From: Vitrella brassicaformis CCMP3155 | Lineage: Eukaryota > Protista > Chromerida | DNA length: 31,423 nt | Direction: 5' to 3' | NCBI GenBank assembly: GCA_001179505.1 | Contig: CDMY01000682.1 | Coordinates: 1 to 31,423 of the forward strand | In this document: positions 1-31,423 of the stretch, piece by piece | How the letters are laid out: each line of letters starts with the position of its first letter | Numbering within the stretch: the stretch's first letter is position 1 | Program-made: the position numbers and the translations under genes | The notes under the pieces: model-generated | What the model saw: only the letters and a program-made list of their open reading frames with translations | What the model was told of the DNA's origin: nothing | Databases searched by the model: none

Positions 1-1475
1 CCGTCGGATGGGGCTCATCCGGCCTTCAACTCGCCTCCCTCTCCCTCTTCCACTCGGTGCATGAGGCCACTCGGGGGTCGGTTATGTGCGACGACCTGGA
101 CGGCTTCCTCTCGGCCTTCAAGGAGAGGCATCTGGTGCCGCTGGAGAAGACCACCCTCGGGCAGCCCAACGCATCGTCGACAGAGCAGTTCTACTGTGTC
201 AAGCCGTCGAGTGAGCGATTTGCCTTAGAGGGGTGTGGGGAGTGCCGCGGGCCGCCGAGCGTCGCGTTGCTGTTCCTTGCGAAAGACAAGGTGCCGTTCG
301 GTCAGCTGTGGGCGGACTGGCTTGGCCTGGCCAGCGACAGGCGCAAGTTCACTGTCTATCTGCACCGGCACGACAACGCCACTGCGGCCCTTCATCCGCT
401 GTTCAATGCCTCGCTCATCGAGCCGGTCGGCACGAGCTACGGCAGCTTCATCCTGGCGGAGAACGCCCTGTGGCGGGCCGCCCTTCGCGACCCGTGCAAC
501 CAGATGATGGTGCTCCTGAGTATCACTCACGTCCCCGTGTCACACCCGGATGTCGTCTACGACGTGCTCTTCGAGACGAGAAGCGATGACATGGGCGGCC
601 TGCCGACCAGTAGAATATGGTAAGGCAGGCAGCCGCATACAGTGATGGGGATGAGGGAGGTAGCCGAATGATTTTCGCGTGTTCTGTTCAGTTATCACGA
701 ATATCGATTCATGAGGGCGGGGCCGGACCGGAGGGAAGCGGGTGTGGTCGCGTCCACGGCAGCAGCCCCTTCGTGTCAAGACGCGCTGAGTGACTCTGCA
801 ATCGGTAGGATTGTCCGTGTTGGGTGAGTACACTAGAAGAGACAAGGAAATGGATCCTCCTGTGTGGTCACAGATCGTAAGCACATGCAGTGGCGGACGT
901 ACAACCGTTACCACGCCGTCCTTACTGCCGCTCAAGGCCTCAACTTCCCTTACGACGGTGTGCACAACTGGAACAAAGCCATCAATTCCGCCCCCGATGA
1001 GTGGTTCCCGCACCACGTGTTGAGGCGCACGCTGGGCAACAAGGCTGTCTGGAAGCAGGTAATGAGAGGGGTGCCCGTCTGGCGACACACACATGGTGCG
1101 TGTGTAATGCTGTCATTCTCGCAGGTCAACGGTGGTCTGGGTGACTGGAGCCAGCAGAGGGAGCCCCACATCGAAGAGCTCTTCTGTGACACTCACATGT
1201 GCTGGAGCTGGCAGAAGACGAAAGACGCCTGCGGTCTAGGGGTCGCGACACAGTGCAGCCGCCTCGGGCCCCTGTGTTACACTCAGCTCAAGCTTGGCAA
1301 GCTGAAGGAGCTGATCAGGAGCCGCCATCCGCTGTTCTTCCGGAAGGTGCTGCCCAATGCCACCGTGATCATCGACTTCAACAAGAGAGAGGTGGGGCTA
1401 GTGGGTGAGCTACTGCTGCCTCTGATAAAGAATGTGAGTGGGACAGATCTAGCCGGCCGCCAGATAGGTGGCTAG
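1..1475 (+). CDS. Core-2/I-branching (Branch, DUF266/GT14-like) glycosyltransferase, 5'-partial, multi-exon (approx. <1-619, 691-~804, 874-1058, 1124-1475)
   Basis: Translation has VALLFLAKDKVPFGQLWADWL..FTVYLH..ENALWRAALRDPCNQMMVLLS..HVPV, then KHMQW and DEWFP, matching the motif order of plant DUF266/BC10-type GT14-like proteins. The frame is open back to the window start. GT-AG introns with compatible phases join the exons. Confidence 0.8.
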
Positions 1476-1920
1476 GGCGTAGAAATGTCCCTTGTGTATT
1501 TTTGTTGTCTTTCTGTATTTGTGTCTCGTGACTTATGGAGCCTCCTCGTCCGTAGCTCGGGCTTGCCCATCTGTACTGTGTAGCATATGATGCGTACTGT
1601 CTCTGTCCTGTGTATTTCCCTTCTTTCGTAGCGCAACGCCTCGTCTGTACTCACACACATGTAGAAACACGAATTTTCTGCCGGTCGGACATTCAGAGAT
1701 GCATATACAGTGGTTGACACGAGGTGATGTGGTATGATATGTATTTGTCTGTTCGTTTGACAAGCAAGCAATCGAGTCGCCAACGAATAAGGGGCTTCCA
1801 AAAGGCATTTTGTTTGTGGAAAATCCAGTACGGTGTATGAGAATCCGAAACGATGAATGAGCCTGCATCTTGTGGGCACCCTTTTTCACATCGAGGAGAC
1901 CCGCTTCATTTGATTTGTGT

Positions 1921-2040
1921 GCTCGTGCGAGCGTCGTGGTCATCAATTTCAAGCAGAGGGAGGTGGGGCTGGTGAGCGAAATGCTCCTGCCTCTGATCCG
2001 GGACAACAGCCAACACACTGTGCAGTCAGCCGTCAGCTAG
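1921..2040 (+). pseudogene. Orphan diverged copy of the Branch/GT14-like C-terminal coding segment
   Basis: VVINFKQREVGLVSEMLLPLIRD (then NSQHTVQSAVS*) aligns with VIIDFNKREVGLVGELLLPLIKN at ~1365-1435, 15/23 identical by manual alignment. An in-frame stop lies upstream near 1857. Confidence 0.7.
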
Positions 2041-2256
2041 ATCGGGCGGCTCGGGTGTCGTTCGATATGTCATTTGAATGATTAGTTCACGTATTGCTTA
2101 TTTGCACACTATTTAGACAATGTGTGGTATCGAAGGGAGTGTGGAGTGTGGAGTGTTTTTTGAGTACGTGTACCTATTTGTGAAGGTGTCTCGTATGCAT
2201 ACATATGGCGTCGGTACGGTTCCCATACACGTAGCTCAAAGTTTCTACCGTCGCTT

Positions 2257-2342
2257 ACACACACATATACACATGTACATATACATTTGCATATACACAT
2301 GTACATGTGCACAGGTATATATATGTACATGTACATGTGTGT
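2257..2342. repeat. Alternating purine-pyrimidine mixed microsatellite (CA/TA/TG; ACATGT units)
   Basis: Almost uninterrupted RY alternation, e.g. acacatatacacatgtacatatac...gtatatatatgtacatgtacatgtgtgt. Confidence 0.85.
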
Positions 2343-2414
2343 CGACGCAACAAGACCCGATACGTATACGTATTTGTCCATGCTTGGTGAACAAGCGAGA
2401 GTGCAGCAATTGCA

Positions 2415-4760
2415 AAGCAGTGGTATTAATTTGTATTCGTTGGCGCGACAGTGAGCGGAGAGACACATGACGGCATACACACTGACAAGATGCTCTTGAA
2501 TGACTCTTTGCATAAACAAATGAACGATAGGCTGCTTGCTTTGCTGCTTCTTTTCCCACGGCTTCACGTCATTCATCGCCCTCCACAGAATATAGGAGCA
2601 AGGGCCATGCTTCCGTGCCTCCGCAGGCTGATCGATTGGAAACGCTACATAGAAACTTCTGCTCACTTCATTTCTTTTGCCCGAGCATTTGGACTGCATT
2701 GGTGTCTCCGTCCTTCACACATTTGCACACGAAAAGACACAGACAGGAAAACACATCGGCCTCACGGCACAAAGGTACGAACACGTATGGTCTATCCGAC
2801 ACACAAAGTACATCAGACACAAGACTGGGCACCCAACAGACAGACAGAGATCTGTGTGTGCACGCAGGCGTGACAAGACGTGCACTCACACATCAGCCAG
2901 CTGGCTATAGCTGTGGCCTCGGAACCCCTAAAGCACCAAACGAACACACTACACGACGCCTTCGCCTTTCAGCACACATGGATGGATGGTACGGATAAAG
3001 GTCTTTCCCCTGCCGGCCTGTTTTGAGCCGGGCAGGAGCAAGAGAGGCAGCAGGGTAGCATCGACAAGGAGACACACAACCACACACACACACACACACA
3101 CACACAGACAGAGAGAGAGAGAGAGACACATACACACGAACCCCGCTTTACACATGAAGGCAAGCAGTGGTATGGCCAGCGGAAAAACCACATGGGTGCA
3201 TGTCCGGCCTGCGAGTGTTGGGAGGCAAATCCCGTCAAGTCACAGGCATGCAGGCTGTGCACAGCGGCTGCTCTCGTACGAACACTCTGGGCCCCACTTC
3301 AAAAACTGCACCCAGGACACACTCACACTCACACACATACACATACACATCGATGAACACATACACAACAAAATGCCACGAGAGGTCAAAAGTGCGCGAA
3401 GGACATGGTGCGGAAACAAAGGAAAAGGAAAACAGAGTGGCAAAAGGTGGACAATGCGAACCACAGAAATTGATTCACTGACAAGGAAGTCACGTATTAA
3501 AAGAGACCATGCCGAGATACCTCAGTATTGGTCAAGAAAGTTGTTGTTCTGCCCACGAGGCACGGGAATCGTGACTGCAGACACACCCAACGAAGCCACA
3601 GGAAGTAAGAGACATTCTCCTTTCTCCCTCTCAGGTCTGCTGCGCAGCTTACAGTGCACTTCGATGTCCTTGCCCTCGATCTCTCTATTGAACGGCGTCG
3701 CTGCGAGTGTGTACATGCCCGGCGAGCCGATGGCCTCACTGGCGGCTTTGGTGAAGGGTGCTTGCAGAGCCATCGTTTCCGAGCCAGCGGGCGGCTCGCT
3801 GTTGCCGAAGGCCGTAAATGCTTGATCCTTGGCGCCCTGGGTGGCCCTCTCGAGATAGGGAGGATCTCGTATGCTGAGCAGCAAGGACATCAAATTGTGC
3901 GTGTGAGGACGTGTGCGTGTGTGTGGGTGCCTTACGTGTCCCAATCCATGAAGTTTCCCTTACACACCACACACAACAGAGCCAGAGCAAACACGTATCA
4001 TCAAGTACGATTCATAAGTGTCTCTGCCCACTTGGTAGTCAAAGAGGAGGAACTGGACGGCTGTGACGCAGGCCGACTCGGGGACGGCCGTGAAGGTGAA
4101 GTCCATACCCATCTCAGCGGGCACCACAAAGTCAGTCGTGCCGTCTTCTATCACCTTGGCGCTGCCCTCGGACTGCCCTCTCTTGACGTCCACCAGCTGG
4201 AAGCCGGCAAGGGACGGAGTGACATCTGCAGACAGAGAGCGGCCACACGGAGAGAGAGATGCACGAGACAAGTAGGTGCATGGAGCTGCGAACACTGACC
4301 TGTGCAATTCTGAGCTGTGTTTGCAATCAGGAGCGACACACACAACGCACAACGTGAATGGCGGCCATCGATCTCATTTGCCCTGTGCTTCCCCGTTACC
4401 TTCGCCTGTTGACGCATCCTCCCCTTCCTGCTTCAGTGTCAGGACGATGCTCTCAAGAACGTCCCCTGGCACGCCGTCTGAAGGGGGAAGACGTTCGAAG
4501 ACGTGGGAAGTGTATGTACAGCGAGGGGCCCTCGGTTACCTTTTTCTGTGCCTGTGTCAGTGTCAGTATCTCTGTCAGTGTCTGTGACTGTGACTGTGAC
4601 TGTGTCAGAATCTCTGTCAGTGTCTCTGCCTTTGTCAATGATAACAGTCACTAAGTCTTTTACGCCGTCCACTAAGTCGTCTAGGTCCTTCGGTTCCTTT
4701 GTCGGGTCCTGCTCTTCCCATTCGTCTGCTGCGACGGCAAGCCCGAGCAGGGCGAGCGAC
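2415..4760. repeat. Inverted segmental duplication arm; partner ~29110-31423
   Basis: The window end (31423) reverse-complements to aagcagtggtattaatttgtattcg at 2415. Similarity continues through the non-coding flank and the unknown secreted protein gene. Confidence 0.9.
3081..3127. repeat. (CA)n(GA)n compound microsatellite
   Basis: cacacacacacacacacacacacacagacagagagagagagagagac. Similar tracts occur at ~15705-15722, ~15933-15971, ~20568-20606 and ~30700-30730. Confidence 0.9.
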
Positions 4761-4795
4761 AGCAGGGTGGCAAGAGAAAAGACCCGAAGATGCAT
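3522..4795 (-). CDS. Unknown secreted protein, copy A1: signal peptide, Asp/Thr low-complexity linker, ~130-aa beta-sandwich-like domain; multi-exon with 15-nt and 23-nt micro-exons
   Basis: MHLRVFSLATLLSLALLGLAVAA|DEWEEQDP is a signal peptide. Spliced product continues ...DGVPGDVLESIVLTLKQEGEDASTGE-AQNCT-DVTPSLAGFQLVD...AVQFLLFDYQ-GNFMDWDT-IRDPPYLE...GMYTLAATPFN...EVH-FTIPVPRGQNNNFLDQY*. Splice sites are largely conserved across the three paralogues. Confidence 0.75.
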
Positions 4796-4896: not shown

Positions 4897-7800
4897 ATGG
4901 CGGCCTCGCTGGTTGCCGTTCTCCTGTGGTCGTCTCTCACGACGGCCTCAGCAGATGAGCACGAGAGAAGCTTCCTTTCTTCTTCGGCCGCAGAGGGCAT
5001 GGCCGCGGCGGTGGATCAGGCGCCGTCCTCCTTTCCATCATCTCCGTTTGTCGTGGAGGGGGCTGTGCGTCCATGGGGCGATGGGCTGTTCGAGTACATG
5101 CATCCCCGGCCAGGGGCGCTGCACGTGTCGGAGCTGACGTCAATTGCAGTCCGGTGATGCACAGCAAAGATGAGACACTCGTTTCAGTGTGCGTGTATGT
5201 CCCGTTTGTCGGTGTATTTCCCGTCAGGGAGGGCGATTTGGTCATCCCCACTGATCTCGACGCACTCTTTGATGTGAAGGGCCGGCAGAGCGGCAAGGTG
5301 GATGGCCGCGTCGTCCTTGCACGCGACAACAAGACGGTGCTCTTCTATCCTGACAAGCCATTTGTCCCTGGCGACAGCGTCACAGTCCAGCTGCGGCCCG
5401 GCCTCCGAGTGCGGCGCTCTGACAACGGCAGAGAGGAGGAGGCGGGCGGACACGAATGGCAATTTCACATCAGAGGCNNNNNNNNNNNNNNNNNNNNNNN
5501 NNNNNNNNNNNNNNNNNNNNNNNNNNNNNNNNNNNNNNNNNNNNNNNNNNNNNNNNNNNNNNNNNNNNNNNNNNNNNNNNNNNNNNNNNNNNNNNNNNNN
5601 NNNNNNNNNNNNNNNNNNNNNNNNNNNNNNNNNNNNNNNNNNNNNNNNNNNNNNNNNNNNNNNNNNNNNNNNNNNNNNNNNNNNNNNNNNNNNNNNNNNN
5701 NNNNNNNNNNNNNNNNNNNNNNNNNNNNNNNNNNNNNNNNNNNNNNNNNNNNNNNNNNNNNNNNNNNNNNNNNNNNNACGGGGGACGAGGAGCTCTATTT
5801 CTTCGGCGTTGGACGGTATTTTGCAGACGAAATCGGCCAGAGCGTCATCACCACTCGAGAGGTACGTCATGTGTCCATCTGCACTGATAGGTGACGCCGA
5901 TGTATCTTGCTGTATGCACATGTAGGGTGACTTGGTCTGGTGGACTCAAGAGGTGGGGAAGGGGGGCGGCATGCTCGGGGTAACGCCAAGGGGCCATCTA
6001 GTCCACTGGGACAAACAGCCTAACGACACGGCCGAGACTGCATACGAGCTGAATTCGACTTATCAGGTGGTCGACAGGCACCAGACCGGTATGCAGACGA
6101 TGTCCTGCGCGGGACGGGGCCAGACGAATGTGTCTGCAGGTCATGGATATCAGCTGGACCGTCACACCATCTCCTTCGACGGCGACAGCGCCATCTTGGT
6201 GGCCTACACTAAGACCAACGGCACAGTTCACAACGGTTTGCAAGCACAGAGCTGCTTGTCTCATCTTTTGACACATCTCTTCTTCTGCTGTGCAGTGGTG
6301 CACGTTCTCGACGCTGACAAGTGGGCAAACGGGAGGACGATTGTCTCATTCATGTACGGACCGCTACGTGTTGCAGGAATGTCCTACTGGAGTGGAGGAC
6401 CATTGATGACTTCATTGGAGCGGCCGACCCTACTCTCGCGGAAGCAACAAAGGATCCAGAAGATGTAAAGGAGAGGCTTGTTTCAGACGTATCGATCGCT
6501 CACTCAACAATTGTGTCTCCGTCTGTCGCTCTGTGCGTTGTGCGCCAGGCCTATCACACCAACAGCGCCGAGCGGACGCCGGACGGTGAGCCGCGCTCGA
6601 CAGGGCACACATCTGGAGATGATGGCTTTTTGCTGCAGGGAACGTAATCGTCTCCATGCGCAACTGTAATCTCGTCCTGTTGCTGAGCGGCAAGACGGGC
6701 CAGATCCTGTGGCGCATGGGAGGCCACACGAAGTACGTCAGTGCAGCTACTTGTGTCCTTGTGCAGCGCCTGTTTGCGTGTGCCATGCAGTGACTTTACT
6801 TTCATCGGCGAAGACATGGATCCCCCATTCGTTGGCCAACATGATGTTCAGCAACTAGCGGACGGCAACATCCTCATGTCAGAAAGATGGCAAAGATAGA
6901 CACAAGAGCCAGTCACCTGTGGACGATGCCCATATGCGGCATGGCATGTAGGTATGACAATGGCCTTCAGAGGGGCATTGGCGGGACACGGCCTTCTAGG
7001 GCTCTCGAGCTGAGTCTTGACCTGAACAAGATGACTGCCACGAAAGTCTGGTCCTTTACGCATCCGAACAAGTGAGGAATCCACTCGCAGGATAGGTCAT
7101 GAGTCTCGTCGTTCTTCGTGTCTGTGCAGAATGAAAAGCTTCTGCTGCGGAGGGGTCCAGAAGGTCGACAACGGAGAGTAAGATAGTAGGCGCGCTCAGT
7201 CATGGAGTGATGCACATTCTGTCTTTGTGTCAGGGGCAACCCACCGACCATGCTAATAAGCTGGGGCTACACTGGTCCATTCTTCACTGAGGTGACTTAC
7301 GAGGAGAATCCGACCATAATTCGCGAGTTCGAGGGTCTCGACGGCCACCGAGGCCTTCTCCAGAGCTGGGAGGGCTTTTCGACGGAGCGGCCGCGGCTGC
7401 TCCTCTGCAGCGACGCCAACACGCAGGCGAGTGGCGGCCAGCCGTCGATCGCCCGGCTGCAGGACTGGACCATGCACTTCTCATTCAATGGCGTCACAGG
7501 TAGGCACGCAGAGACACTACACGCAGGCAGTAATCGATGGCCTTCTGTGTAGGGATCAGCAAGTGGAGGCTGTACATCGGCGCTGACAGTGATGTGCCGC
7601 TCAGCCGGCACCTGATGGAGCGCAGCAAGACCGCCTTCGAGGAGATCATCACACTGCAGGAGCTGGTCGACACCATGGCGGCCCGGAACGTGACTCTGAC
7701 GACAGACAGCAACGCCAACACGACCGACGTGGCCTTGTATGTGCGGGTGGTGCCGGTCAAGGGCGATAGTGAGCTGCTCAGGCCATCCAAGGCACTCAAG

Positions 7801-8224
7801 GGTATGGCGGCCACACGAAATGTAATACAGACCATTGTGGGTGTGTCTGTGTGTGTGTCTGTTGCCTGCAATCAGTGCCGCTGGTTGTGTCGTCTCGCGA
7901 CGAGGAGAGTGGTGCTGTGAGTGTGTCCCCTCCCCGCTCTGCAGTGCCCTGCCGCTGCTACCAGCCCGACATCGGCCTGAGGGAGCACCTGGGCAGACCA
8001 AAGCCGGAGCGGGAGAGCCCCGTTGTGGACATGGTGGCCGTCAGTGAGTGCGCCAGGGCATGTGCCGACAGCGACAAGTGCGAGACATTCTTTTTCTTCG
8101 AAGACACCGGCGAGTGTCAAATGGACGAGAAGAAGCATGAGGGACGCTACGGCAGGACGGATCTCCACTCGCTCGGAGGGGTCGTCTCTGGCCGGAGGAA
8201 CTGCATGTACGAGAGGCTGGCGTG
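4897..8224 (+). CDS. Secreted aryl-sulfate sulfotransferase (ASST / Arylsulfotran_2-like), copy 1, with N-terminal Ig-like (Big_5-type) and C-terminal PAN/apple domain; multi-exon, spans an N gap
   Basis: Signal peptide MAASLVAVLLWSSLTTASA. Ig-like segment FEYMHPRPGALHVSELTSIAVR..VLFYPDKPFVPGDSVTVQL. ASST motifs in order: DRH, YHTNS, NVIVSMRNCN, ILWRMGG, GQHDVQQL, YDNG, SRALELSL, ISWG, FSFNGVT..W...KTAFEE. C-terminal ECARACADSDKCETFFFFEDTGEC...VSGRRNC is an apple-type Cys pattern. Confidence 0.85.
5478..5777. other. Assembly gap (300 N)
   Basis: N run. The paralogous interval 12504-12695 implies only ~192 bp are missing. Confidence 0.98.
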
Positions 8225-9713
8225 AAAAATGCCGACCTTGAAGATGGAACGAGAGGCCTGTCTATTTCCTGTGCTCTTGCGCTCCATGTGTTCGTATCTG
8301 CTGCTGCTGTTGCTGCCTCATCTTCGCCCTTTTCGCTGGTTGCATGGACGATTAGATGGGAGAGGGGGAGACACCTGAGGCCGAGTATGTGTGTACACTG
8401 CTGCTGTGCGTATCGATTTGTCCATGTTCGACTGCACATTTAGACAGACGAATCGATGGGTTGCTCACTCGGGCATTCATTGTGTAGTACGTGCCCTCTG
8501 TAGGATCGATGGCTGTTTTTAATCTGTATTTGTAGAGCCGTTTTCATTCGATTTGTATTTGTTCGTTCATGCTGTCTCCTCACATATATGTACACAACTC
8601 ATGTACGTGCACACTTATTCGTTTGCAACTGTCTGTCCGTGGGGAATTGTGTCCTGTCAGTTCGGCACCCAATCTGACGCTGACGGAACACATTCGGTTT
8701 TTCTTCCAAGGGGGGCCGGGCAGGGTAGAAAGACATGCTGTTTGATAAAAAACACTGTCCCGATATCTTGGAACCATGAATGATATAAACTCTTCGAGCT
8801 CCCCCCCCCTGCCACGAACCAGCCACACAACCGACGTTCTCCGCCTTAGCAGAGAGGGTGAATTTTTTCGCCGCTTTGCTGATCTTGAGAGGTCTCAAAG
8901 TCACCGTCTGATTTGTGGACTGCTAATACGAAAAAATGTGAATCACTCCCGTCGTCAGCCCATGGCGGGAATCCATTGACTCATAGCGCAACGGCAGGCA
9001 GAGTCTGTCGGTCTCTCATGAAATGACTGCGTCAACAGTCAAGGAATCAATGATAGATCTGTCCAGTGATGAATCACTGCATCACTGCAGGCGCCTGCTT
9101 CGTATGTGCTGAGTGAGAGACGCCAGTGATCCTGGCCTGGATGGCCACGACGACGGCAGGTCACATGGGTGTCTCACATCAGAATGCAGTTCAAAACAGT
9201 CCATGTGGCGCTGGATGCTTTCATGCTTTCTCGACCTGCCGCCCTCTTTTTTCTGGTGCCTCGTCCACGATTCTGCCCTTGACCCGCTCCATTTAATTTG
9301 TGTGCTCGTGCAAGCGTCACACAAGTACACTATCCGTCCTTCCACTTTCCCCACATAAAGCCAAGACGAGGAACACACAAACATCTCTGACATCTCTCAG
9401 CTGACACATTCCCCGCGCCCATAAAGGACCGACAAGCGGATACAGGGGGAGGCACACATGGCACACATCCACATCGGCACAAGAAGAGCCAAAAACCACG
9501 CGAGGACAAAATTAGCACTTGGTTTTCTCGCAGGGCATTGCATGCGCCCAAGAATTCCTCGCTGTCCCTTCCCCGTCAATGTGCATCCGGTACGCAGACA
9601 CTAATCAAACACCACCGTACGTGACGAACAAAAGGGAGCTCACGCACGAAGCCACCAGGCAGACATCGTCCGCCAAAACCAATGTCACACTGCAAACAGG
9701 ACTCAAAGACCCA

Positions 9714-10989: not shown

Positions 10990-11024
<35 letters not shown>

Positions 11025-11804: not shown

Positions 11805-12200
11805 ATCCGGGCACGAGTCAAATGTGTGAAAGAACTTACAGAGGCGGCACAGGGGAGCCAATCGATGGCAGTGAGAGAGTGGCAATGATGACCGTCATTG
11901 GCAACGTGCGGCTGCTCGGTGCCCGTACAGCTGTTGTAAATTCACTCATCGGATATCTTCTCCTTTACTGCTTAATCAAAGCCGGATCACAAGCCGGATC
12001 ACAAGCCGAGGTAGAGAGAAGGTTCCTAATTCCGTCCAATGCGTCGTTGGCGCCGGCCTCTCTTGATCGGAGGCGGTTCATCGTGGAGGGCGCTGTGCGT
12101 CCGTACGGGGGCAACTCGAGTACATGCATCCCCTCCCAGGGGCGCTGCACGTGTCGGAGCTGACGTCAATTGCAGTCCGGTGATGCGCAGCAAAGATGAG
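11528..12200. repeat. Inverted duplication of the PLOD-like 5' end, shared promoter and ASST 5' end; partner ~28330-29042
   Basis: ORFs 11400..11885(-) and 28684..29058(+) are identical up to TCQRLSS. 11822..12163(+) matches 28367..28747(-). Confidence 0.92.
11805..11884. promoter_or_regulatory. Putative bidirectional promoter (PLOD-like / ASST copy 2), ~80 bp
   Basis: Divergent ATGs at 11804 (-) and 11885 (+). The same sequence is duplicated at ~28685-28764. Confidence 0.4.
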
Positions 12201-20556: not shown

Positions 20557-20570
20557 CATCATAACTAACA

Positions 20571-20606
<36 letters not shown>

Positions 20607-20808
20607 CGGACTAGCAAACTCTAAGCTGACACACACATGCGACACTGGAAATGGCTGGTTGAGCCCTTACATCACTCTGGGTGCTTTAACGCAGATGTCG
20701 ATGCTGTGTCGAGAAAGGCACAGGGCGAGAACAGTGGATGATCGCGAGCAACACTCGCATCTGAAGCAACCAAGACAGACAGATGATGCAGTGAGTTCAT
20801 GGGTAGGG

Positions 20809-23332: not shown

Positions 23333-24411
23333 ATGGACTCAGCTGCACAACCTCTGTCCGCACGTGTCCAAGTGCTGAAAACCACTGGCCTCATCCTCCT
23401 TACCGGCCTGTGCGTCTTCCTGCTCGAGCTTCACTTTGGCCTGCGGAACAGCCTACAGAAATTCAGAGGCGCCGAAGCGGCATCGCTCTGCAATGCGACG
23501 GCAGGATACTCAGAGGAGCAGGGCAGTGGAGGTGACGATGCCGTGGCCGCCATCAGTGAGAGTCCGCCTTTGCCCGTCATGGTAGAGATGAGAGACTACC
23601 CTTTCTATCACCGCTCTGCCTGTCCTCGGTCTGTGTTTGCTTTCGCCAGATGCACGAAAAGGAGGCCGCGCTGGTGGAGAGTCTTCTGTCGTCCGATGTG
23701 GTGGCGCTAGAGTGGGGCAGCGGAGGAAGCACATTCCTTATTTCTCCGCGGGTCCAGACGCTCTACTCCATCGAGGCCTCGGCTGGCTGGTGCGACGGCA
23801 TGCAGCAAAACGCTGGAGAGGCAATGAAGGTGCTCAGGAGGGCAGAAAAGCTGTTTTTTCTGTGTGCCAATAGGTGAGCCAAAACAACGCCGCTGCTGTC
23901 ACGCACGGAAGCTCACGGATGGATGGATGGATTGATGAATGATCAGATACGCTCCTACGAAACGCCTCTCCTACCCCACTGACAAGCCGTCAGAGGCCGT
24001 AAAGGCCTTTCGTGGGCCATACATTGAAGTGATGGACACGTTGGCGAACCTTCGAAATGTGACCTACTACGATCTCGTGCTGATTGACGGCCGATATCGG
24101 CTGGCGTGCCTGATGTACGCCCTCAAGTACACGGACAGCAAGTCGAAGGTGAGCGCACAGGGAAAGAGCCGGGCAGATACATTTAGCCGATCTGTTTTCT
24201 TCTCTTTTGTGGTCTTGATTACGTCGTTCAGCTCCTTGTCCACGATTTCGACCGATTCAAGAAGCGAATTGCCGAGCAACTGCCCAACACCTTCGAATTG
24301 GTTCAGGAAGCCGAGAAGATGGGATGGCTGAAGAAGAAGGAAGGGGCCAGCTTCGATAGTGAGGAAGTCCAGAGCTTTTACAAGGAGATGATACTATCGC
24401 CCGGCCCATGA
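23333..24411 (+). CDS. Class I SAM-dependent methyltransferase with N-terminal membrane anchor; exons ~23333-23581, 23650-23873, 23947-24148, 24232-24411
   Basis: TM TGLILLTGLCVFLLELHFGL. Motif I VALEWGSGGST, then YSIEASAGW, YDLVLIDGRYRLAC and LLVHDF. Exon phases are consistent through to the stop at 24409-24411. Confidence 0.85.
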
Positions 24412-25459: not shown

Positions 25460-28400
25460 TCAGGCCAGTTCTTCTTGTACGCACGCTGACAGCCCAGAGA
25501 CGACCCCGCCAAGCGAGTGCAGCTCTTGATGGCTCTCATGCTTCTTCTCGTCCATTTCACACTCGCCGGTGTCTTCGAAGAAGAAGAATGTCTTGCACTT
25601 GTCGCTGTCGGCACATGCCCCGGCGCACTCACGGATGGCCGCCATGTCCACAACGGGGCTCTCCCGCTCCGGCTTTGGTCTGCCCAGGTGCTCCCTCAGG
25701 CCGATGTCGGGCTGGTAGCAGCGGCAGGGCACTGCAGAGAGGGGAGGGGACACACTCACAGCACCACTCTCCTCGTCACGAGACGACACAACCAGCGGCA
25801 CTGATTGCACCCAACAGACACGCAGAGACACCCAGCATGGTCTGTGTTACATTTCATGTGGCCGTCATACCCTTGAGTGCCTTGGATGGCCTGAGCAGCT
25901 CACTGTCGCCCTTGACCGGCACCACCCGCACATACAAGGCCACGTCGGTCACGTTGGCGTCGCTTTTTGTCGTCAAAGTCATATTCCGGGCCGCCATGGT
26001 GTCGACCAGCTCCTGCAGTGTGACGATCTCCTCGAAGGCGGTCTTGCTGCGCTCCATCAGGTGCCGGCTGAGCGGCACATCACTGTCAGCGCCGATGTAC
26101 AGCCGCCACTTGCTGATCCCTACACAGAAGGCCATCGATCACTGCCTGCGTGTAGTGTCTCTGCGTGCCTACCTGTGACGCCATTGAATGAGAAGTGCAT
26201 GGTCCAGTCCTGCAGCCGGGCGATCGACGGCTGGCCGCCACTCGCCTGCGTGTTGGCGTCGCTGCAGAGGAGAAGCCGCGGCCGCTCCGTTGAGAAGCCC
26301 TCCCAGCTGTGCAGCAGTGGACGATGGCCTCGAAAGCCTTCGAACTCGCGAATTATCGTCGGGTTGTCGTCGTAAGTCACCTCAGTGAAGAATGGACCAG
26401 TGGAGCCCCAACCTATCAGCATGGTCGGGGGGTTGCCCCTGACACAAAGACAGAATGCGCATTCTACGCACTGACGACAGTGTCCAATCGCTTACTCTCC
26501 GTTGTCAACCTTCTGGACCCCTCCGCAGCACGTGCTGGTCTTTCTGCTCACACACGACGAGACGCGTCACCTATTCTGCCGCGGGTGGACTTCATACTTG
26601 TTCGGATGCGGAAAGGACCAGACTTTCGTGGCCGTCATCTTGTTCAGGTCAAGACTCAGCTCGAGTGCTCGCGAGGGTCTCCCTGCCCGCATGCCACTTC
26701 GACTCCCATTGTCATACCTACATGCCGCATATGGGCATCGTCCACAGAGGACTGGCTTTTCTGCCTATCTTTGCCATGTCGCTGACATGAGGATGTTGCC
26801 GTCCGCTAGTTGCTGTGCATGGTGTTGGCCAACGAATGGGGGATCCATGTCTTCGCCGATGAAAGTGAAGTCACTGCATGGCAGACGCAGACAGGCGCTG
26901 CACAACACAGGCGGCTTCATTGACGTACCTCGTGTGGCCCCCCATGCGCCACAGGATCTGGCCCGTCTTGCCGCTCAGTAGCACAAGTAAATTGGCATTG
27001 TGCACGGAGACGATCACATTGCCTGGAGCAGGATGCATTCGGGCAATGTGTTTGCCAGTGTCCAACGTTGCTTACCGTCAGGCGTCCGCTCGGCGTTGTT
27101 CGTGTGATACACCTGAGAAACATACACGTTGAGAGGAAAACACGTACCCAGCTTTCCAAAGCATTTGTACGTCCCCTCCATCCCATGGTGCATCCGGCAG
27201 CATCGGGTCGGCTCCGCCTCTGAAATCGTCGACGGTTCGCCATTCCATCAACACGTTCCTGACGGGCCGCACGGAGCCGACTGCTTTGTACACGGCCATA
27301 CGCAAAACGGGCGCCTACTTGTCTGCATCTTGAACCTGAACCACTGCGGCCACAAGGGAATGAGTGGTCAAAACACCCTTTTGCCTGTTCGACTTACCGG
27401 TGTGTATTGTGCGGTTGAGCGCGTTGATCCTGGTGTAAGCCGTCACTACTGAGTTGTCGTTATCAAAAGTAATTGAGTGACGGTCGACTTGATAGCCGTG
27501 ACCTGTTTAAACACATGATGTGCGTTCAGAAAAAAAGAGACGGACAGGCTGGTCCGTAATCAATTACACACGTACCCATTACATATCTGTCGACCACTTG
27601 ATATGTGGCGTTCAAAAGATAGACTGTGTCGGCAGTGTCGTTCAATAACTGGTCCCAGTGTGCCAGATGGCCATTCGGCGTGACGCCAAACATGCCGCCT
27701 CCTAATTTGCCTTCTGAGGTCCACCACACTAAGTCGCCCTAGATGAACACGATGAATGAAGACATGCGCTGGCCACCGTCTTTTGCATGACTGTACCTGA
27801 CGTGTAGCGATCAGGCTTTCGCCAGCTCGCCCGCGGACGCCAAAGAAATAGAGCTCCTCGTCCCCCGTGCCAATGTCTGCTTTCCTCCCCTCCAAGGCCG
27901 CCTTCTCCCCCTCGGCTGACGGCCTCCACTTGGCTGACCACGTCGGCAGCGTGCGGTAGCGGTCCATCGGCGACGGCTTCTTGTCGGCCTCCTGCTCACT
28001 CTCGTTCAGCTGTCTACCATACATGAGCGACCAAATCTCTTCTTCGCTGATCGACTCGGTCTTGCCTCTGATGTGAAATTGCCATTCGTGTCCGCCCGCC
28101 TCCTCCTCTCTGCCGTTGTCAGAGCGCCGCACTCGGAGGCCGGGCCGCAGCTGGACTGTGACGTTGTCGCCAGGGACGAATGGCTTGTCAGGATAGAAGA
28201 GCACCGTCTTGTTGTCGCGTGCAAGGACGACGCGGCCATCCACCTTGCCGCTCTGCCGGCCCTCCACATCAAAGAGTGTGTCGAGATCAGTGGGGATGAC
28301 CAAATCGCCCTCCCTGACGGGACATACACAGACACATCGGCGAGTGTCTCATCTTTGCTGCACATCTCACCTGACCGCAATTGACGTCAGCTCCGACACG

Positions 28401-28612
28401 TGCAGCGCCCCTGGCCGGGGATGCATATACTCGAGCTGCCCGCCGCCGTACGGACGCACAGCCCCCTCCACGATGAACCGCCTCCGATCAAGAGAGGCCG
28501 GCGCCAACGACGCATTGGACGGAATTAGGAACCTTCCCTCTCCCTCGGGTTGTGATCCGGCTGCACAAAAAAGAGCAGTAAGCAAGAGAAAAGACACACA
28601 AGAGGAAGGCAT
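25460..28612 (-). CDS. Secreted ASST copy 4 (Ig-like + ASST + PAN/apple), apparently complete; alternative start at 28684
   Basis: Signal peptide MPSSCVSFLLLTALFCAAG. Exon series parallels copy 1: DRH, YHTNN, NVIVSVHNAN, ILWRMGG, GQHHAQQL, LIGWG, FSFNGVT, KTAFEE, and the apple Cys pattern ending VQEELA*. Confidence 0.82.
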
Positions 28613-28764
28613 AGGTCCGATGAGTGAATTTACAACAGCTGTACGGGCACCGAGCAGCCGCACGTTGCCAATGACGGTCATCATTGCCACTCTCTCACTG
28701 CCATCGATTGGCTCCCCTGTGCCGCCTCTGTAAGTTCTTTCACACATTTGACTCGTGCCCGGAT

Positions 28765-28956
28765 ATGCAGGCCCAGGCGACTGCTTCTCGTTTTGCCTTG
28801 CTTTTCGCCGCGGCGTTCCTGGGCGTCTTCCTCATTTCCTCCTTTGTCGGCGTGTATGTGAGTTCGCGGGGATGGCTGAGCTCGAGCCTCAGGGGAATCG
28901 TGTGCACGTCAGGGGCCGGACCAGCGCCAAAGCAGCGGGAAGTGCCTGTAGATCAG
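28765..28956 (+). other. Duplicated exon 1 (signal anchor) of the PLOD-like gene, followed by a truncated intron/exon 2
   Basis: MQAQATASRFALL...EVPVDQ|gtgagc is 192 nt and nearly identical to 11804-11613 (-). Similarity breaks at ~29042. Confidence 0.85.
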
Positions 28957-29061
28957 GTGAGCTGCGCAGAATGCGATGCACATTTATTTGGACTGCTTAT
29001 GTTTGGTGTAGCTGGTGGTGTCACATGTCAGCGGCTCTCTTCAACTTCCCTACCGTGACAG

Positions 29062-30310
29062 ACAAGGAATACAAAGCACTTTGGCTGGCCCAAACACACG
29101 TACACCGAAGTTGCCGTCGCGGCAGACGAATGGGAAGCGCAGGAGCCGACGCCAGCGGCGGTGGACGTTGGTCCAGCTGACCTGCCTGTGGATGTACCCG
29201 GCGACGGCGTAGAGGTGACTGTTGTCATTGACAAAGGCAAAGACAACACCGACACTGACACTGACACTGACACTGACACCGACACAGAAAGAGGTAACCG
29301 AGCACCCCTCGCTGTACATACACTTCCCACGTCTTCCAACGTCTTCCCCCTTTTAATGGCGTGCCAGGGAAGGTACTCGAGCACATCGTCGTGACGTTGA
29401 AGCAGGAAGAGGAGGGTGCGTCAACAAGCGAAGGTAAAGGTGAAAGCACAGGGCAAATGAGATCGATGGCAGCCATTCACGTTGTGCGTTGATGTGTGTC
29501 GCTCCCGATTGCAAACACAGCTCAGGATTGCACAGGTCAGGGTTCGCACTTACATGCAATCTAGTCGTCTCCTGTCTCTCCCCGTGTGGCCGCTCTCTGT
29601 CTGCAGGTGTCACTCCGTCACTTGCCGACTTCCAGCTGGTGGACCTGAACAGAGGGCAGTCCGAGGGCAGCGCCAAGGTGATAGAAGACGGCACGACTGA
29701 CTTTGTGGTACCCGCTGAGATGGGTATGCACTTCACCTTCACGGCCGTCCCCGAGTCGGCCTGCGTCACAGCCGTCCAGTTCCTCCTCTTTGACTACCAA
29801 GTGGGCAGAGACACTTATGAATCGTACTTGATTGATACGTGTTTGCTCTGGTCTGCTGTGTGTGTGTGGTGTGTATTAAGGGAAACTTCATGGATTGGGA
29901 CACGTAAGGCCACATACACATACACCCACACGTCCTCACACGCACAATTGATGGCCTTGCTGCTCAGCACACGAGATCCTCCCTATCTCGAGAGGGCCAC
30001 CCAGGGCGCCAAGGGAGGAGCATTCACGGCCTTCGGCAACAGCGAGCCGCCCGCTGGATCGGAGGCGATGGCTCTGCAAGCTCATTTTACTAAGGGCGCG
30101 AGTGAGGCCATCGGCTCGCCGGGCATGTTCACACTCGCAGCGACGCCGTTGAATGGAGAGATCGAGGGCAAGGACACCGAAATCACATTTAAGCTGCGCA
30201 GCAAGCCTGAGAGGGGGAGACAGGAAGGAGAATGACTTCGTTGGGTGTGTGTTGTAGTCACGATTCCCGTGACTCCTGAGCAGAAGAACACATTTCTTGG
30301 CCAATACTGA
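29062..30310 (+). CDS. Unknown secreted protein, copy A3: own signal peptide lost; candidate chimeric gene or pseudogene
   Basis: Homology to A1 starts at VAVAADEWEAQEP (~29110). Micro-exons at 29521-29535 and 29881-29903 are intact. One acceptor (cag to tta, ~29355) and the last donor (gt to tt, ~30190) are mutated, so reading may stop at 30235. The terminal exon FTIPVTPEQKNTFLGQY* is still open. Confidence 0.5.
29250..29290 (+). repeat. Coding (GACACT)n hexamer microsatellite encoding (DT)n
   Basis: gacactgacactgacactgacactgacaccgacacag. The related tract in A1 (~4552-4625) encodes DTDRDSDTVTVTVTDTDRDTDTDT. Confidence 0.85.
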
Positions 30311-31423
30311 GATATCTCGGCATGGTCTTTTTCTAGCGCTAGTCGTGGCGGCGATACGTGATTTACTCGTCAGTAAATTCCTTGTCCACCTTTTGCCTCT
30401 CTTTTCTTTTTTTCCGCCCCCGTGTTCTTCGTGCACTTTTAAGCGTTCGTGGCAATTTGTTGGTGTATGTGAGTGTGTGTGAGTGTGTGTGAGTGTGAGT
30501 GTGAGTGTGTCCTGGGTGCAATTTTTGAAGTGGGACCCAGAGTGTTCGTACGAGAGCAGCCGCTGTGCACAGCCTGCATGCCTGTGACTTGACGCGACTT
30601 GCCTCCCAACACTCGCAGGCCAGACATGCACCCATGTGGTTCTCCTGCCACCCATACCACTGCATAGCTTCGTGTGTAAAGCGGGGTCCGTGTGTATGTG
30701 TCTCTCTCTCTCTCTCTGTGTGTGTGTGTGGTTGTCTGTCTCCTTGTCGATGCTACCCTGCTGCCTCTTTTTCTTGCTCCTTCCACCTGCACGGCTCAAA
30801 CAGGCCGGCAGGGGAAAGACCTTTATCCGTACCATCCATCCATGTGTGCTGATAGGGGAGGGCGTCGTGCAGTGTGCTCGTTTGGTGCTTTAGAGGTTCG
30901 GAGGTCACGCCTTGTGACCTCTGATGTGTGAGTGCACGTCTTGTCACGCCTGCGTGCACACACAGATCTCTGTCTGTCTGTTGGGTGCCCAGTCTTGTGT
31001 CTGATGTACTTTGTGTGTCGGATAGACCATCCGTGTTCGTACCTTTGTGCCGTGAGGCCGATGTGTTTTCCTGTCTGTGTCTTTTCGTGTGCGAAAGTGT
31101 GACGGACGGAGACACCAATGCAGTCCAAATATTCGGGCAAGAGAAACGAAGTGAGCAGAGGTTTTTGGCGTCTCCAATCGATCAGCCTGCGGAGGCACGG
31201 AAGCACGGCCCTTGCTCCCATATTCTGTGGAGGGCGATGAATGACGTGAAGCTCTGGGAAGAAAAGCGCAAAGCAGGCAGCTTGTTTGCTTGCTCCAGCT
31301 CTCTCACTCATCACTCGTTTGTTTATGCAAAGAGTCATTCAAGATCATGTTGTCAGTGTGTATGCCGTCATGTGTCTCTCCGCTCACTGTCGCGCCAACG
31401 AATACAAATTAATACCACTGCTT

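What the first reader, a model, noticed from the sequence alone, without database searches (positions are those of the whole stretch)
1..31423. Candidate eukaryotic biosynthetic gene cluster for a sulfated, methylated glycan (GT14-like + PLOD-GT + GT43 + GT47 + methyltransferase + ASSTs + secreted protein)
Seen in sequence: every recognisable gene in 31 kb has a signal peptide or type II anchor (the GT14-like N-terminus lies outside the window), and there is no housekeeping gene. Four unrelated GT families, a methyltransferase and sulfotransferases are interleaved, so simple tandem duplication cannot explain the co-location. Established knowledge: GT14 (XYLT, core-2), GT43 (GlcAT-I) and GT47 (EXT) build animal glycosaminoglycan linkers and chains. 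GT43 (IRX9/14), GT47 (IRX10) and O-methyltransferases build plant glucuronoxylan. In those organisms the genes are dispersed. Inference: this is a clustered pathway for a GAG- or xylan-like surface or cell-wall polymer that is O-methylated and sulfated, possibly built on the co-clustered secreted protein.
Basis: partly seen in the sequence, partly recalled or inferred. Interest (0 to 1): 0.92.

Follow-up and report, generated by a model that had tools for sequence, protein, structure and literature searches.

The report
Golgi sugar-enzyme gene neighbourhood in Vitrella
A small, partly mis-assembled scaffold of the alga Vitrella brassicaformis really does hold four unrelated sugar-adding enzymes and a likely sugar-methylating enzyme side by side. 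That they build one sulfated, methylated polymer is not shown.

Summary
The window is the whole 31.4-kb scaffold CDMY01000682.1 of Vitrella brassicaformis.

**Gene content: mostly confirmed**
- Present: a GT14/Branch gene cut by the scaffold end, an LH3-like PLOD GT, an animal-type GT43 glucuronyltransferase with intact catalytic motifs, and a GT47.
- Also present: a membrane-anchored class-I methyltransferase-fold protein, ASST+PAN genes and an orphan secreted protein.
- Every complete product starts with a hydrophobic anchor or signal.
- Spliced RNA contigs cover PLOD-GT, GT43, GT47 and the methyltransferase.

**Caveats**
- Nearly half the scaffold is 86-100% segmental duplication of one module, orphan gene head-to-head with ASST-PAN.
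- All three gaps sit at repeat edges. One "ASST" model is a chimera without the propeller.
- Only GT43-GT47-MT-ASST3 lie on one gap-free contig.
- Paralogues of PLOD-GT, GT43 and MT are dispersed among unrelated genes. Only GT47-GT14 adjacency recurs.

**Pathway reading**
- The methyltransferase family sits in glycan operons in bacteria and a giant virus, which supports glycan methylation.
- Neither the animal GAG-linker set nor the plant xylan set is complete.
- ASSTs are not known polysaccharide sulfotransferases.

**Verdict:** a probably non-random glycosylation neighbourhood. A single pathway is unproven, and "sulfated" is weak. First-reader notes record other glyco-rich neighbourhoods in this genome.

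The parts
3..1475 (+). GT14 / Branch-family glycosyltransferase. It is partial: the 5' end lies off the scaffold. The NCBI model has 421 aa, with exons at about 3-620 and 837-1475.
   Evidence: Pfam Branch 9.1e-8 on ORF 3-620. NCBI gene call. Atlas: 92 of 100 nearest clusters are Branch. No Xylo_C hit in any ORF.
3522..4795 (-). Orphan secreted protein, copy 1 (NCBI 279 aa). It has a signal peptide, an acidic Thr-Asp repeat linker, and a domain of about 150 aa with no family match.
   Evidence: Gene call with no Pfam hit. Approximate model and N-terminus. Paralogous to 16296-17223 and 29247-31423.
4897..8225 (+). ASST + PAN gene, copy 1. The likely start is 4897, which gives a signal peptide; the NCBI start is 4999. 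It spans assembly gap 5478-5777.
   Evidence: Arylsulfotrans, Arylsulfotran_2 and PAN_1 are on record for the 664-aa model. PAN_1 1.5e-6 on ORF 7773-8222. Motifs YHTNS at 6552 and FVGQHD at about 6830. The gap matches about 192 nt of copy 2.
9714..11804 (-). LH3-like PLOD glycosyltransferase (P0001, 557 aa). It has a type II anchor, a GT domain and an accessory domain, and no lysyl hydroxylase domain. The mRNA spans about 9218-11917.
   Evidence: Pfam GT_PLOD 5.9e-36. Aligns to human LH3 residues 17-495 with FxDxYD, NSGG, DDQLF and HGNG kept. Spliced transcripts L002-L004.
11885..13291 (+). ASST-PAN copy 2, 5' part only. It ends at gap 13292-13591. Its last 596 bases are 100% identical to 5778-6373.
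   Evidence: The NCBI 540-aa model 12124-14620 crosses the gap and carries only a weak PAN hit.
13592..14620 (+). Truncated ASST-PAN remnant. A repeat of 12394-12824 (98%) is joined directly to the PAN-bearing 3' end, which equals copy 1 from 7616 onward. The beta-propeller core is absent.
   Evidence: Self-BLAST. PAN_1 among the ORFs.
16243..17681 (-). Orphan secreted protein, copy 2 (NCBI 241 aa). It spans gap 16832-17131 and lies head-to-head with GT43.
   Evidence: Gene call. 16296-16831 and 17132-17223 match copy 3 at 86-93%, and the gap corresponds to about 43 nt there.
17930..19230 (+). GT43 beta-1,3-glucuronyltransferase-like enzyme (P0006, 339 aa, type II anchor). The mRNA runs from 17795 to about 19909-20596.
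   Evidence: Pfam 7.5e-56 over the full profile. PDB GlcAT-P/S/I at 2e-42 to 1e-38, with the DDD motif and catalytic Glu aligned. Transcripts L007 and L008.
20672..23215 (-). GT47 exostosin-family glycosyltransferase. It has 13 exons, and the RNA-based product is 582 aa with a type II anchor. The NCBI model of 501 aa lacks the anchor.
   Evidence: 12 spliced junctions in three RNA runs and none in the DNA run. Model equals L007:2585-4330:-. Pfam Exostosin_GT47 3.4e-11, above the cutoff. Atlas: 80 of 100 nearest clusters.
23333..24411 (+). Type II-anchored class-I SAM-methyltransferase-fold protein of the PDB 3CVO family (P0028, 284 aa, 4 exons). It lies head-to-head with GT47; the transcript 5' ends are about 35-55 bp apart.
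   Evidence: RNA junctions. P0028 matches the query exon (window 23650-23871) at 100%. Family profile against 3CVO, 6.4e-22. AF2 pLDDT 83.8; Foldseek hits COMT, MeT1 and 3CVO. No Pfam hit.
25460..28684 (-). ASST + PAN gene, copy 3. It is the only copy without a gap. The NCBI model is 731 aa starting at 28426; the likely true start is 28684, which gives a hydrophobic leader.
   Evidence: Arylsulfotrans, Arylsulfotran_2 and PAN_1 on record. PAN_1 1.7e-7 and ASST_2 0.0023 on ORFs. Motifs YHTNN and FVGQHH. RNA runs hold 54-58% of its words.
28765..30235 (+). Orphan secreted protein, copy 3 (NCBI 307 aa). Its first exon is a duplicate of the PLOD-GT first exon, which gives it a TM anchor.
   Evidence: 28652-28955 matches the 5' end of the PLOD-GT mRNA at 100%.
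29247..31423 (.). Inverted copy (about 86%) of 2415-4586. It runs to the scaffold's right end.

Best explanation
This is a genuine neighbourhood of secretory-pathway glycosylation genes in Vitrella brassicaformis.

**The enzymes**
- Five membrane-anchored, lumen-facing enzymes of unrelated families lie within about 24 kb.
- They are a GT14/Branch enzyme, an LH3-like GT without hydroxylase, an animal-type GT43 glucuronyltransferase, a plant/algal-type GT47, and a 3CVO-family methyltransferase.
- They are transcribed.

**Most likely function (inferred)**
- They decorate secreted or wall glycoconjugates with a side chain or short polymer that contains glucuronic acid and is probably O-methylated.
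- A glycoprotein glycan is at least as likely as a wall polysaccharide.

**The interleaved module**
- A locally amplifying module is interleaved with these genes: an orphan secreted protein head-to-head with an ASST-PAN protein.
- It is present in three diverged and partly broken or mis-assembled copies.
- Its presence is better explained by segmental duplication than by membership of the pathway.

**What is shown and what is inferred**
- Shown: gene identities, catalytic motifs of GT43 and PLOD-GT, splicing and transcription, anchors, and the duplication map.
- Inferred: shared pathway, substrate, and any sulfation.
For: **Families**
- Family assignments rest.
- GT43 keeps the DDD motif and the catalytic Glu when aligned to GlcAT-P.
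- PLOD-GT keeps the LH3 metal and UDP-sugar motifs.

**Methyltransferase**
- Its family matches PDB 3CVO at 6.4e-22, and it has a class-I MT fold.
- A bacterial relative overlaps a Wzx flippase gene beside two GT2 genes.
- Another lies among KdtA, LpxK and three GT9 genes.
- A giant-virus relative lies between GT11, RXYLT1_C and GT2 genes.

**Expression and topology**
- Spliced RNA contigs cover PLOD-GT, GT43, GT47 and MT.
- RNA runs hold 54-58% of the words of the ASST3/orphan stretch.
- All complete products have N-terminal hydrophobic segments.

**Linkage**
- GT43, GT47, MT and ASST3 lie on one gap-free stretch, 17132-31423.
- The closest GT47 paralogue (62%) lies tail-to-tail with the closest GT14 paralogue (50-60%) on another scaffold.

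**Chance**
At a GT fraction of 1-2% of genes, such a set is expected 0.004-0.07 times per genome (gene number from PMC4501334).
Against: - No co-expression test was possible.
- The word-limited homologue searches listed no protein named as Chromera, so cross-species synteny could not be tested.
- Paralogues of PLOD-GT, GT43 and MT sit among unrelated genes on three other scaffolds.
- Four other GT47 paralogue loci share no neighbours with this one.
- Vitrella's median intergenic distance is 92 bp and head-to-head pairs are over-represented genome-wide. The GT47/MT bidirectional arrangement is therefore not special (PMC4501334).
- GT14 and PLOD-GT are joined to the rest only by scaffolding across repeat-bounded gaps.
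- The background GT density was not measured. At the biased 6.4% seen near paralogues, the set would not be significant.
- The enzyme set fits no known pathway completely.
Confidence: 0.5

Rival explanations
1. This is co-location without a shared pathway. Vitrella's glycosylation families are expanded, and its compact genome, shaped by duplication, brings glyco-genes together in several places. These genes would then act on different glycans, and the neighbourhood would be a by-product of segmental duplication and gene density.
For: - GT47 alone has at least 12 paralogues at 45-62% identity on many scaffolds, including a tandem pair.
- Every enzyme here has a paralogue at 48-65% identity elsewhere.
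- Three of those five paralogues lie among unrelated genes.
- GT8, Branch and GT47 genes turned up among 47 neighbours of paralogues.
- First-reader notes record other glyco-rich neighbourhoods in this genome: s1-218522 and s1-231158 (unchecked).
- Head-to-head pairing is a genome-wide habit.
Against: - Four unrelated GT families plus a glycan-type methyltransferase among about seven distinct genes is unlikely at realistic GT densities.
- The GT47-GT14 adjacency recurs in a paralogous locus.
- Prokaryotic and viral relatives of the methyltransferase are repeatedly embedded among GTs.
Confidence: 0.3
2. This is the first reader's specific reading: one biosynthetic cluster for a GAG-like or xylan-like polymer that is both O-methylated and sulfated by the ASSTs, possibly built on the co-clustered secreted protein.
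For: - The GT14, GT43 and GT47 families are those used for animal GAG linkers and chains and for plant xylan (established knowledge).
- Candidate catalytic His motifs are kept in ASST copies 1 and 3.
- Bacterial ASSTs can sulfate sugars in vitro (abstract of PMC13426309).
- The orphan protein has a Thr-rich repeat.
- The Chromera wall contains 4- and 2,4-linked xylose and galactans (PMC9293442).
Against: - No GT7, GT31, GT64, GT8, Xylo_C or DUF579 hit was found in any ORF or product.
- The listed relatives of the GT43 outside Vitrella are mainly animal GlcATs, with no plant IRX9/14 among them.
- The GT47 has an Exostosin domain only.
- Polysaccharide sulfotransferases are described as PAPS-dependent, a class apart from ASSTs (PMC11625862).
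- The ASST genes belong to a duplicating module. One copy lacks the propeller, and a first-reader note (s1-209550, unchecked) records another ASST cluster elsewhere in the genome.
- No uronic acid, sulfate or O-methyl data exist for Vitrella.
Confidence: 0.1
3. The cluster is largely an assembly artefact. Repeat-bounded contigs from different loci were scaffolded together, so the apparent 31-kb cluster does not exist as one locus.
For: - All three gaps are at repeat edges.
- The stretch 5778-13291 begins and ends with the same 596 bases at 100% identity, while other copy pairs are 86-94% identical.
- The sequence after gap 2 re-reads 431 bases from before it.
- The scaffold ends inside a repeat.
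- DNA runs hold only about 0.8 of the words of 25400-30300, against 0.98-0.99 of the words of 19200-24500.
- Exon 1 of the PLOD-GT mRNA fits the distant duplicate better than its own locus.
Against: - GT43, GT47, MT, ASST3 and orphan copy 3 are on one gap-free stretch of 14.3 kb.
- A transcript contig bridges GT43 and GT47.
- Each of the other contigs carries a GT next to an ASST module, which fits one repeated locus.
- The copies are diverged (86-94%), so they are real paralogues and not a collapsed repeat.
Confidence: 0.1

Closest known systems
Five-gene galactosaminogalactan cluster of Aspergillus and Metarhizium (PMC8224951)
   Same: A eukaryotic, physically linked set of unrelated enzymes for one extracellular glycan. 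It shows that glycan biosynthetic clusters exist outside bacteria.
   Different: - That cluster is conserved across species, co-regulated and genetically proven.
- Here there is no cross-species synteny, no co-expression test and no known product.
- The enzyme families also differ.
Animal GAG linker and HNK-1 machinery (XYLT GT14, B3GAT GT43, EXT GT47/GT64) and collagen glycosylation by LH3
   Same: - The GT43 aligns to GlcAT-P/S/I at about 1e-40 with DDD and the catalytic Glu kept.
- The PLOD-GT aligns to the LH3 GT and accessory domains with catalytic motifs kept.
- All are type II Golgi-style proteins.
   Different: - There is no GT7, GT31 or GT64, and no Xylo_C on the GT14.
- The GT47's nearest Atlas clusters are mainly streptophyte and diatom.
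- There is no lysyl hydroxylase domain.
- In animals these genes are dispersed.
Plant glucuronoxylan and arabinogalactan machinery (IRX9/14 GT43, IRX10 GT47, GlcAT14 GT14, GXM/AGM DUF579 methyltransferases)
   Same: - The same three GT families occur together with a type II-anchored methyltransferase-fold protein.
- IRX15-LIKE appears among the fold matches of the MT (rank 14).
   Different: - No plant IRX9/14 appears among the GT43's listed relatives, which are mainly animal GlcATs.
- The MT has no DUF579 sequence match and belongs to the 3CVO family.
- There is no GT8 (GUX).
Bacterial and giant-virus glycan loci that carry the 3CVO-family methyltransferase
   Same: The same small MT family lies beside GT2 genes and a Wzx flippase, inside an LPS-core locus, and between GT11, RXYLT1_C and GT2 genes.
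   Different: - Those are operons or intron-less viral clusters.
- The Vitrella gene has three introns, an added N-terminal membrane anchor and a dispersed paralogue.
- No member of this family has a demonstrated substrate.
GT-rich small outlier chromosome of Ostreococcus (my own recollection, not checked here)
   Same: An algal genome region enriched in glycosyltransferases and methyltransferases for surface glycoconjugates.
   Different: That is a whole chromosome with atypical composition. This is a 31-kb scaffold of ordinary composition.

Membership tests
GT43 (beta-1,3-glucuronyltransferase type) | Full Glyco_transf_43 domain above Pfam's cutoff | tested here: met
   P0006 scores 189.7 bits against a cutoff of 27, over profile positions 1-207 of 207.
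GT43 (beta-1,3-glucuronyltransferase type) | DDD metal and UDP motif, and the catalytic Glu | tested here: met
   The alignment to GlcAT-P (1V82) shows YFADDDN and the ES pair in register.
GT43 (beta-1,3-glucuronyltransferase type) | UDP-GlcA donor and Gal-beta acceptor | not testable with these tools
   This needs an enzyme assay.
GT47 (exostosin family) | Exostosin_GT47 domain above Pfam's cutoff | tested here: met
   The RNA-based 582-aa product scores 43.4 bits against 33.4. The NCBI 501-aa model scores only 'weak'.
Animal EXT-type HS polymerase | A GT64 domain fused to the GT47 domain | tested here: not met
   Only the Exostosin domain is found. There is no phmmer hit to solved structures.
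GT14 / Branch | Branch domain above Pfam's cutoff | tested here: met
   ORF 3-620 scores 32.4 bits against 23.4, but covers only profile positions 1-115 of 250. The Atlas agrees.
XYLT-type GAG initiator | C-terminal Xylo_C domain | tested here: not met
   No Xylo_C hit was found among 199 ORFs.
PLOD/LH3 glycosyltransferase | GT_PLOD domain with the DxxD, NSGG, DDQLF and HGNG motifs | tested here: met
   124.3 bits. The motifs align to LH3.
PLOD/LH3 glycosyltransferase | C-terminal 2OG/Fe lysyl hydroxylase domain | tested here: not met
   The alignment ends at LH3 residue 495, and the protein ends at residue 557.
Class I SAM-dependent methyltransferase | Rossmann-like MT fold with a Gly-rich motif I and an acidic residue after strand 2 | tested here: met
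   - AF2 pLDDT is 83.8.
- The top fold matches are COMT, MeT1 and 3CVO.
- E104, G106, G108, E125 and D205 are invariant in the family alignment.
Class I SAM-dependent methyltransferase | A curated Pfam MT family above its cutoff | tested here: not met
   P0028 has no hit. Its homologues reach Methyltransf_24 only below the cutoff.
DUF579 (GXM/IRX15) glycan methyltransferases | Sequence membership (PF04669) | tested here: not met
   There is no Pfam hit. IRX15-LIKE is only one of many fold matches.
ASST (PAPS-independent aryl sulfotransferase) | Arylsulfotrans or Arylsulfotran_2 propeller | tested here: met
   - Hits are on record for the 664-aa and 731-aa models.
- ORF-level hits reach 1.7e-5 and 0.0023.
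- The feature is not met for the 540-aa model of copy 2.
ASST (PAPS-independent aryl sulfotransferase) | A sulfo-carrying His and a second catalytic His | tested here: inconclusive
   - YHTN(N/S) and FVGQH(H/D) are present in copies 3 and 1, and in copy 3 they lie 58-59 residues apart in my approximate gene model.
- No alignment to a solved ASST could be obtained.
Functional biosynthetic gene cluster | Co-expression of the members | not tested
   Only the presence of spliced contigs in two or three RNA runs was seen.
Functional biosynthetic gene cluster | Conserved linkage in other genomes or paralogous loci | tested here: inconclusive
   - Only GT47-GT14 adjacency recurs.
- Paralogues of PLOD-GT, GT43 and MT are dispersed.
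- No Chromera orthologues were found.
Animal GAG linker pathway | GT7 (beta4GalT7) and GT31 (beta3GalT6) present | tested here: not met
   Neither family appears among the Pfam hits to the window's ORFs or products.

The most novel reading that the evidence does not exclude
Vitrella arranges its Golgi glycan-building enzymes in multi-family, operon-like neighbourhoods, and this is one of several. This one would encode a complete route to a glucuronic-acid-containing, O-methylated glycoconjugate. The secreted ASST-PAN proteins would then sulfate it without PAPS. That would be the first glycan biosynthetic cluster in an alveolate and the first natural ASST-type glycan sulfation in a eukaryote.
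Probability: 0.1. Interest if true: 0.85.

Novelty: new variant of a known kind. Interest (0 to 1): 0.45.

Why it matters
- Glycan pathways in eukaryotes are almost always encoded by dispersed genes, which makes them hard to assign. A true cluster in a free-living relative of apicomplexans would give a ready-made hypothesis for an unknown wall or surface glycan.
- Vitrella's wall has never been analysed (PMC9293442).
- It would also give the 3CVO methyltransferase family a first functional context, since no member has a known substrate.
- The more sober value is practical. The annotation here needs repair: the GT47 model lacks its anchor, the ASST starts are too far downstream, and one ASST model is a chimera.
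- The scaffold needs long-read reassembly before any cluster claim is built on it.

Tried and rejected
- **Metagenome scan for the MT transcript.** I searched metagenome contigs with a 36-base exon word and found nothing. The protein id came instead from a representative search with one exon.
- **Solved-structure search with ASST ORFs.** phmmer gave only a chance TetR hit and generic beta-propeller blades. The catalytic histidines could therefore be judged only by motif.
- **My own exon-chaining gene models.** These gave 666-674 aa for ASST3 against NCBI's 731 aa, and 263-304 aa for the orphan gene. They are approximate. I used them only to read motifs and N-termini, not as evidence of exact structure.
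- **Giant-virus origin.** I considered this because the nearest Atlas cluster of the GT14 is viral and PLOD-GT hits mimivirus R699. I rejected it as a recent event. The genes carry 1-12 spliceosomal introns and have dispersed nuclear paralogues, and a viral-contig scan with PLOD-GT found no relative.
- **A second, paralogous copy of the whole cluster.** I rejected this because paralogues lie on four different scaffolds with unrelated neighbours, except for GT47-GT14.
- **The GT47/MT bidirectional promoter as evidence of co-regulation.** I set this aside because head-to-head pairs and gaps of about 92 bp are the norm in this genome.
- **Published CAZyme counts.** No published count for Vitrella was found.

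Full report
**Identity of the window.** The 451-aa ORF at 9717-11069 (-) found a 557-aa protein of Vitrella brassicaformis CCMP3155 whose longest contig is 31,423 bases. The look-up placed it on CDMY01000682.1 of GCA_001179505.1, which has exactly that length. The window is therefore a whole small scaffold, one of 1,064. The genome is 72.7 Mb with 22,817 genes (PMC4501334).

**Gaps and duplication (tested first).** Self-BLAST shows that about 45-50% of the scaffold is internal duplication at 86-100% identity. One module is present three times: an orphan secreted-protein gene lying head-to-head with an ASST-PAN gene.
- Copy 1 spans 2415-8191 (+).
- Copy 2 spans 11527-15249 (+).
- Copy 3 spans 31423-24828 (inverted) and is the only copy without a gap.

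Mapping onto copy 3 and copy 2 gives the following.
- Gap 1 (5478-5777) corresponds to about 192 nt of copy 2.
- Gap 3 (16832-17131) corresponds to about 43 nt of copy 3.
- After gap 2 (13292-13591), the sequence repeats 12394-12824 at 98%. At 14027 it jumps to the equivalent of copy 1 position 7616. That skips the 1.7 kb that encodes the propeller.
- The 596 bases right of gap 1 (5778-6373) and left of gap 2 (12696-13291) are 100% identical, whereas other copy pairs are 86-94% identical.

All three gaps therefore lie at repeat edges, and continuity and frame across them cannot be established. The NCBI models that cross them (664, 540 and 241 aa) are unverified. The 540-aa model is a chimera with only a weak PAN hit. 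DNA runs hold only about 0.8 of the sampled words of 25400-30300, against 0.98-0.99 for 19200-24500. The solid part is the gap-free stretch 17132-31423, which carries GT43, GT47, MT, ASST3 and orphan copy 3.

**Gene inventory.**
- **GT14/Branch, 3-1475 (+).** Pfam gives 9.1e-8 on the first ORF. In the Atlas, 92 of 100 nearest clusters are Branch. The 5' end is off the scaffold, and there is no Xylo_C domain.
- **PLOD-GT, 9714-11804 (-), P0001.** GT_PLOD scores 5.9e-36. It aligns to human LH3 residues 17-495, that is the GT and accessory domains. FxDxYD, NSGG, DDQLF and HGNG are conserved, and there is no hydroxylase domain.
- **GT43, 17930-19230 (+), P0006.** Pfam gives 7.5e-56. PDB GlcAT-P/S/I match at 2e-42 to 1e-38, with the DDD motif and catalytic Glu aligned. 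Outside Vitrella, the listed relatives are mostly animal B3GAT-like proteins plus a choanoflagellate. No plant IRX9/14 appears in the list.
- **GT47, 20672-23215 (-).** Three RNA runs show 12 GT-AG introns of 56-78 nt that are absent from a DNA run. The resulting ORF is 582 aa, identical to the ORF on transcript contig L007, and has a type II anchor. It passes Pfam's Exostosin_GT47 cutoff (3.4e-11). The NCBI 501-aa model lacks the anchor. Its nearest Atlas clusters are mainly streptophyte and diatom, and it has no GT64 domain.
- **Methyltransferase-like gene, 23333-24411 (+), P0028, 284 aa.** It has three introns and a membrane anchor, and no Pfam hit. A family alignment (A3) matches PDB 3CVO, a 'methyltransferase-like protein of unknown function', at 6.4e-22. 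The AF2 model (pLDDT 83.8) matches COMT-type O-methyltransferases, the mycobacterial polysaccharide methyltransferase MeT1, and 3CVO. Motif-I glycines and the acidic residues are invariant.
- **ASST-PAN genes.** Arylsulfotrans, Arylsulfotran_2 and PAN_1 are on record for copies 1 and 3. PAN_1 appears on ORFs in all three copies. Hydrophobic leaders lie upstream of the NCBI starts. The motifs YHTN(N/S) and FVGQH(H/D) resemble the two-histidine arrangement of ASSTs and are kept in copies 3 and 1 (mechanism from the preprint read). I could not align them to a solved ASST.
- **Orphan gene.** It encodes a signal peptide, a Thr-Asp repeat and an unassigned domain. In copy 3 the first exon is a duplicate of PLOD-GT exon 1.
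- No tRNA or Rfam RNA is present.

**Is it a functional cluster?**

Evidence for:
- Five unrelated lumenal enzymes occur among about seven distinct genes. At a GT fraction of 1-2% of genes, such a set is expected 0.004-0.07 times per genome.
- The closest GT47 paralogue (62%) lies tail-to-tail with the closest GT14 paralogue (50-60%) on CDMY01000419.1.
- Relatives of the methyltransferase sit inside glycan loci in three of four contexts examined. One overlaps a Wzx flippase gene beside two GT2 genes. One lies among KdtA, LpxK and three GT9 genes. One lies between GT11, RXYLT1_C and GT2 genes in a giant-virus MAG. The fourth, another giant-virus contig (L079), had no GT among the two neighbouring ORFs scanned.

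Evidence against:
- Paralogues of PLOD-GT (65%), GT43 (48%) and MT (58%) lie among unrelated genes on three other scaffolds.
- Four other GT47 paralogue loci share nothing else with this one.
- The word-limited homologue searches listed no protein named as Chromera, so cross-species synteny could not be tested.
- Vitrella's median intergenic distance is 92 bp, and head-to-head pairs are over-represented. The 35-55 bp between the GT47 and MT transcript starts is therefore ordinary.
- Among 47 neighbours of paralogues, three were GTs. At that biased rate the set would not be significant.
- Co-expression could not be tested.

**What pathway?** Neither template fits.
- The GAG-linker template lacks GT7, GT31, GT64 and Xylo_C.
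- The xylan template lacks an IRX9-type GT43, GT8 and DUF579.
- The best-supported chemistry is beta-glucuronylation by the intact GT43, together with O-methylation of a sugar.
- The LH3-like GT suggests that a protein-linked glycan is at least as likely as a wall polysaccharide.
- Sulfation is weak. Polysaccharide sulfotransferases are described as PAPS-dependent and distinct from ASSTs (PMC11625862), although bacterial ASSTs accept sugars in vitro (PMC13426309 abstract).
- The ASST genes belong to a duplicating module. A first-reader note (s1-209550, unchecked) records another ASST cluster elsewhere in the genome.
- Vitrella's wall is unanalysed. Chromera's wall is mainly cellulose with minor xylose and galactose linkages, and no uronic acid, sulfate or methyl data are reported (PMC9293442).

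**Comparison and novelty.** Eukaryotic glycan clusters exist, for example the five-gene galactosaminogalactan cluster of Aspergillus (PMC8224951). This would be a new variant with a different enzyme set in an alveolate. First-reader notes record other glyco-rich neighbourhoods in the same genome (s1-218522, s1-231158; unchecked). That could mean either a genome-wide habit or a high background.

Noticed in passing
window 28652-28955 (+) and 11610-11917 (-): The promoter-proximal first exon of PLOD-GT is duplicated with the ASST module and now forms exon 1 of orphan gene copy 3. This replaces its signal peptide with the PLOD-GT membrane anchor. The assembled PLOD-GT transcripts match the distant duplicate at 100% and their own locus at 99.7%.
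   Followed up: partly
window 20672-23215 (-): The NCBI GT47 model (501 aa, P0105) starts 81 residues too late and lacks the type II anchor. RNA contigs give 582 aa and 13 exons, some as short as 26-44 nt, with introns of 56-78 nt.
   Followed up: yes
window 4897 and 28684: The NCBI ASST-PAN models start at internal ATGs (4999 and 28426). Upstream in-frame ATGs would add hydrophobic leaders.
   Followed up: partly
window 5778-6373 and 12696-13291: The stretch between gap 1 and gap 2 begins and ends with the same 596 bases at 100% identity, 6,918 bases apart. That is the signature of an assembler walking round a tandem repeat or using one contig end twice.
   Followed up: partly
L021-L100 (viral contigs); L083:7971-8594: The 3CVO-type methyltransferase family is common in viral contigs: 148 relatives, in giant-virus MAGs and other viral contigs. 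In one giant-virus MAG it lies between GT11, RXYLT1_C-like and GT2 genes.
   Followed up: partly
L016 (CDMY01000419.1) 10001-15173; L018 (CDMY01000837.1) 242-5876: The GT47 family is expanded in Vitrella, with at least 12 paralogues at 45-62% identity. One locus has a tandem GT47 pair with an AP2 gene between them. Another has a GT47-GT14 pair.
   Followed up: partly
window 4540-4700 (-), 29150-29290 (+): The acidic Thr-Asp repeat of the orphan protein differs in length between the two copies modelled.
   Followed up: no
window 19157-20761: GT43 and GT47 are convergent and their 3' ends abut or overlap. One GT43 contig reaches 20596, and the GT47 mRNA ends near 20579-20618. One transcriptome contig (L007) fuses both genes.
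   Followed up: partly
window 25400-30300: DNA runs hold only 0.78-0.81 of the sampled words here, against 0.98-0.99 in the unique stretch 19200-24500. This hints at assembly errors or collapsed repeats in the duplicated segment.
   Followed up: no
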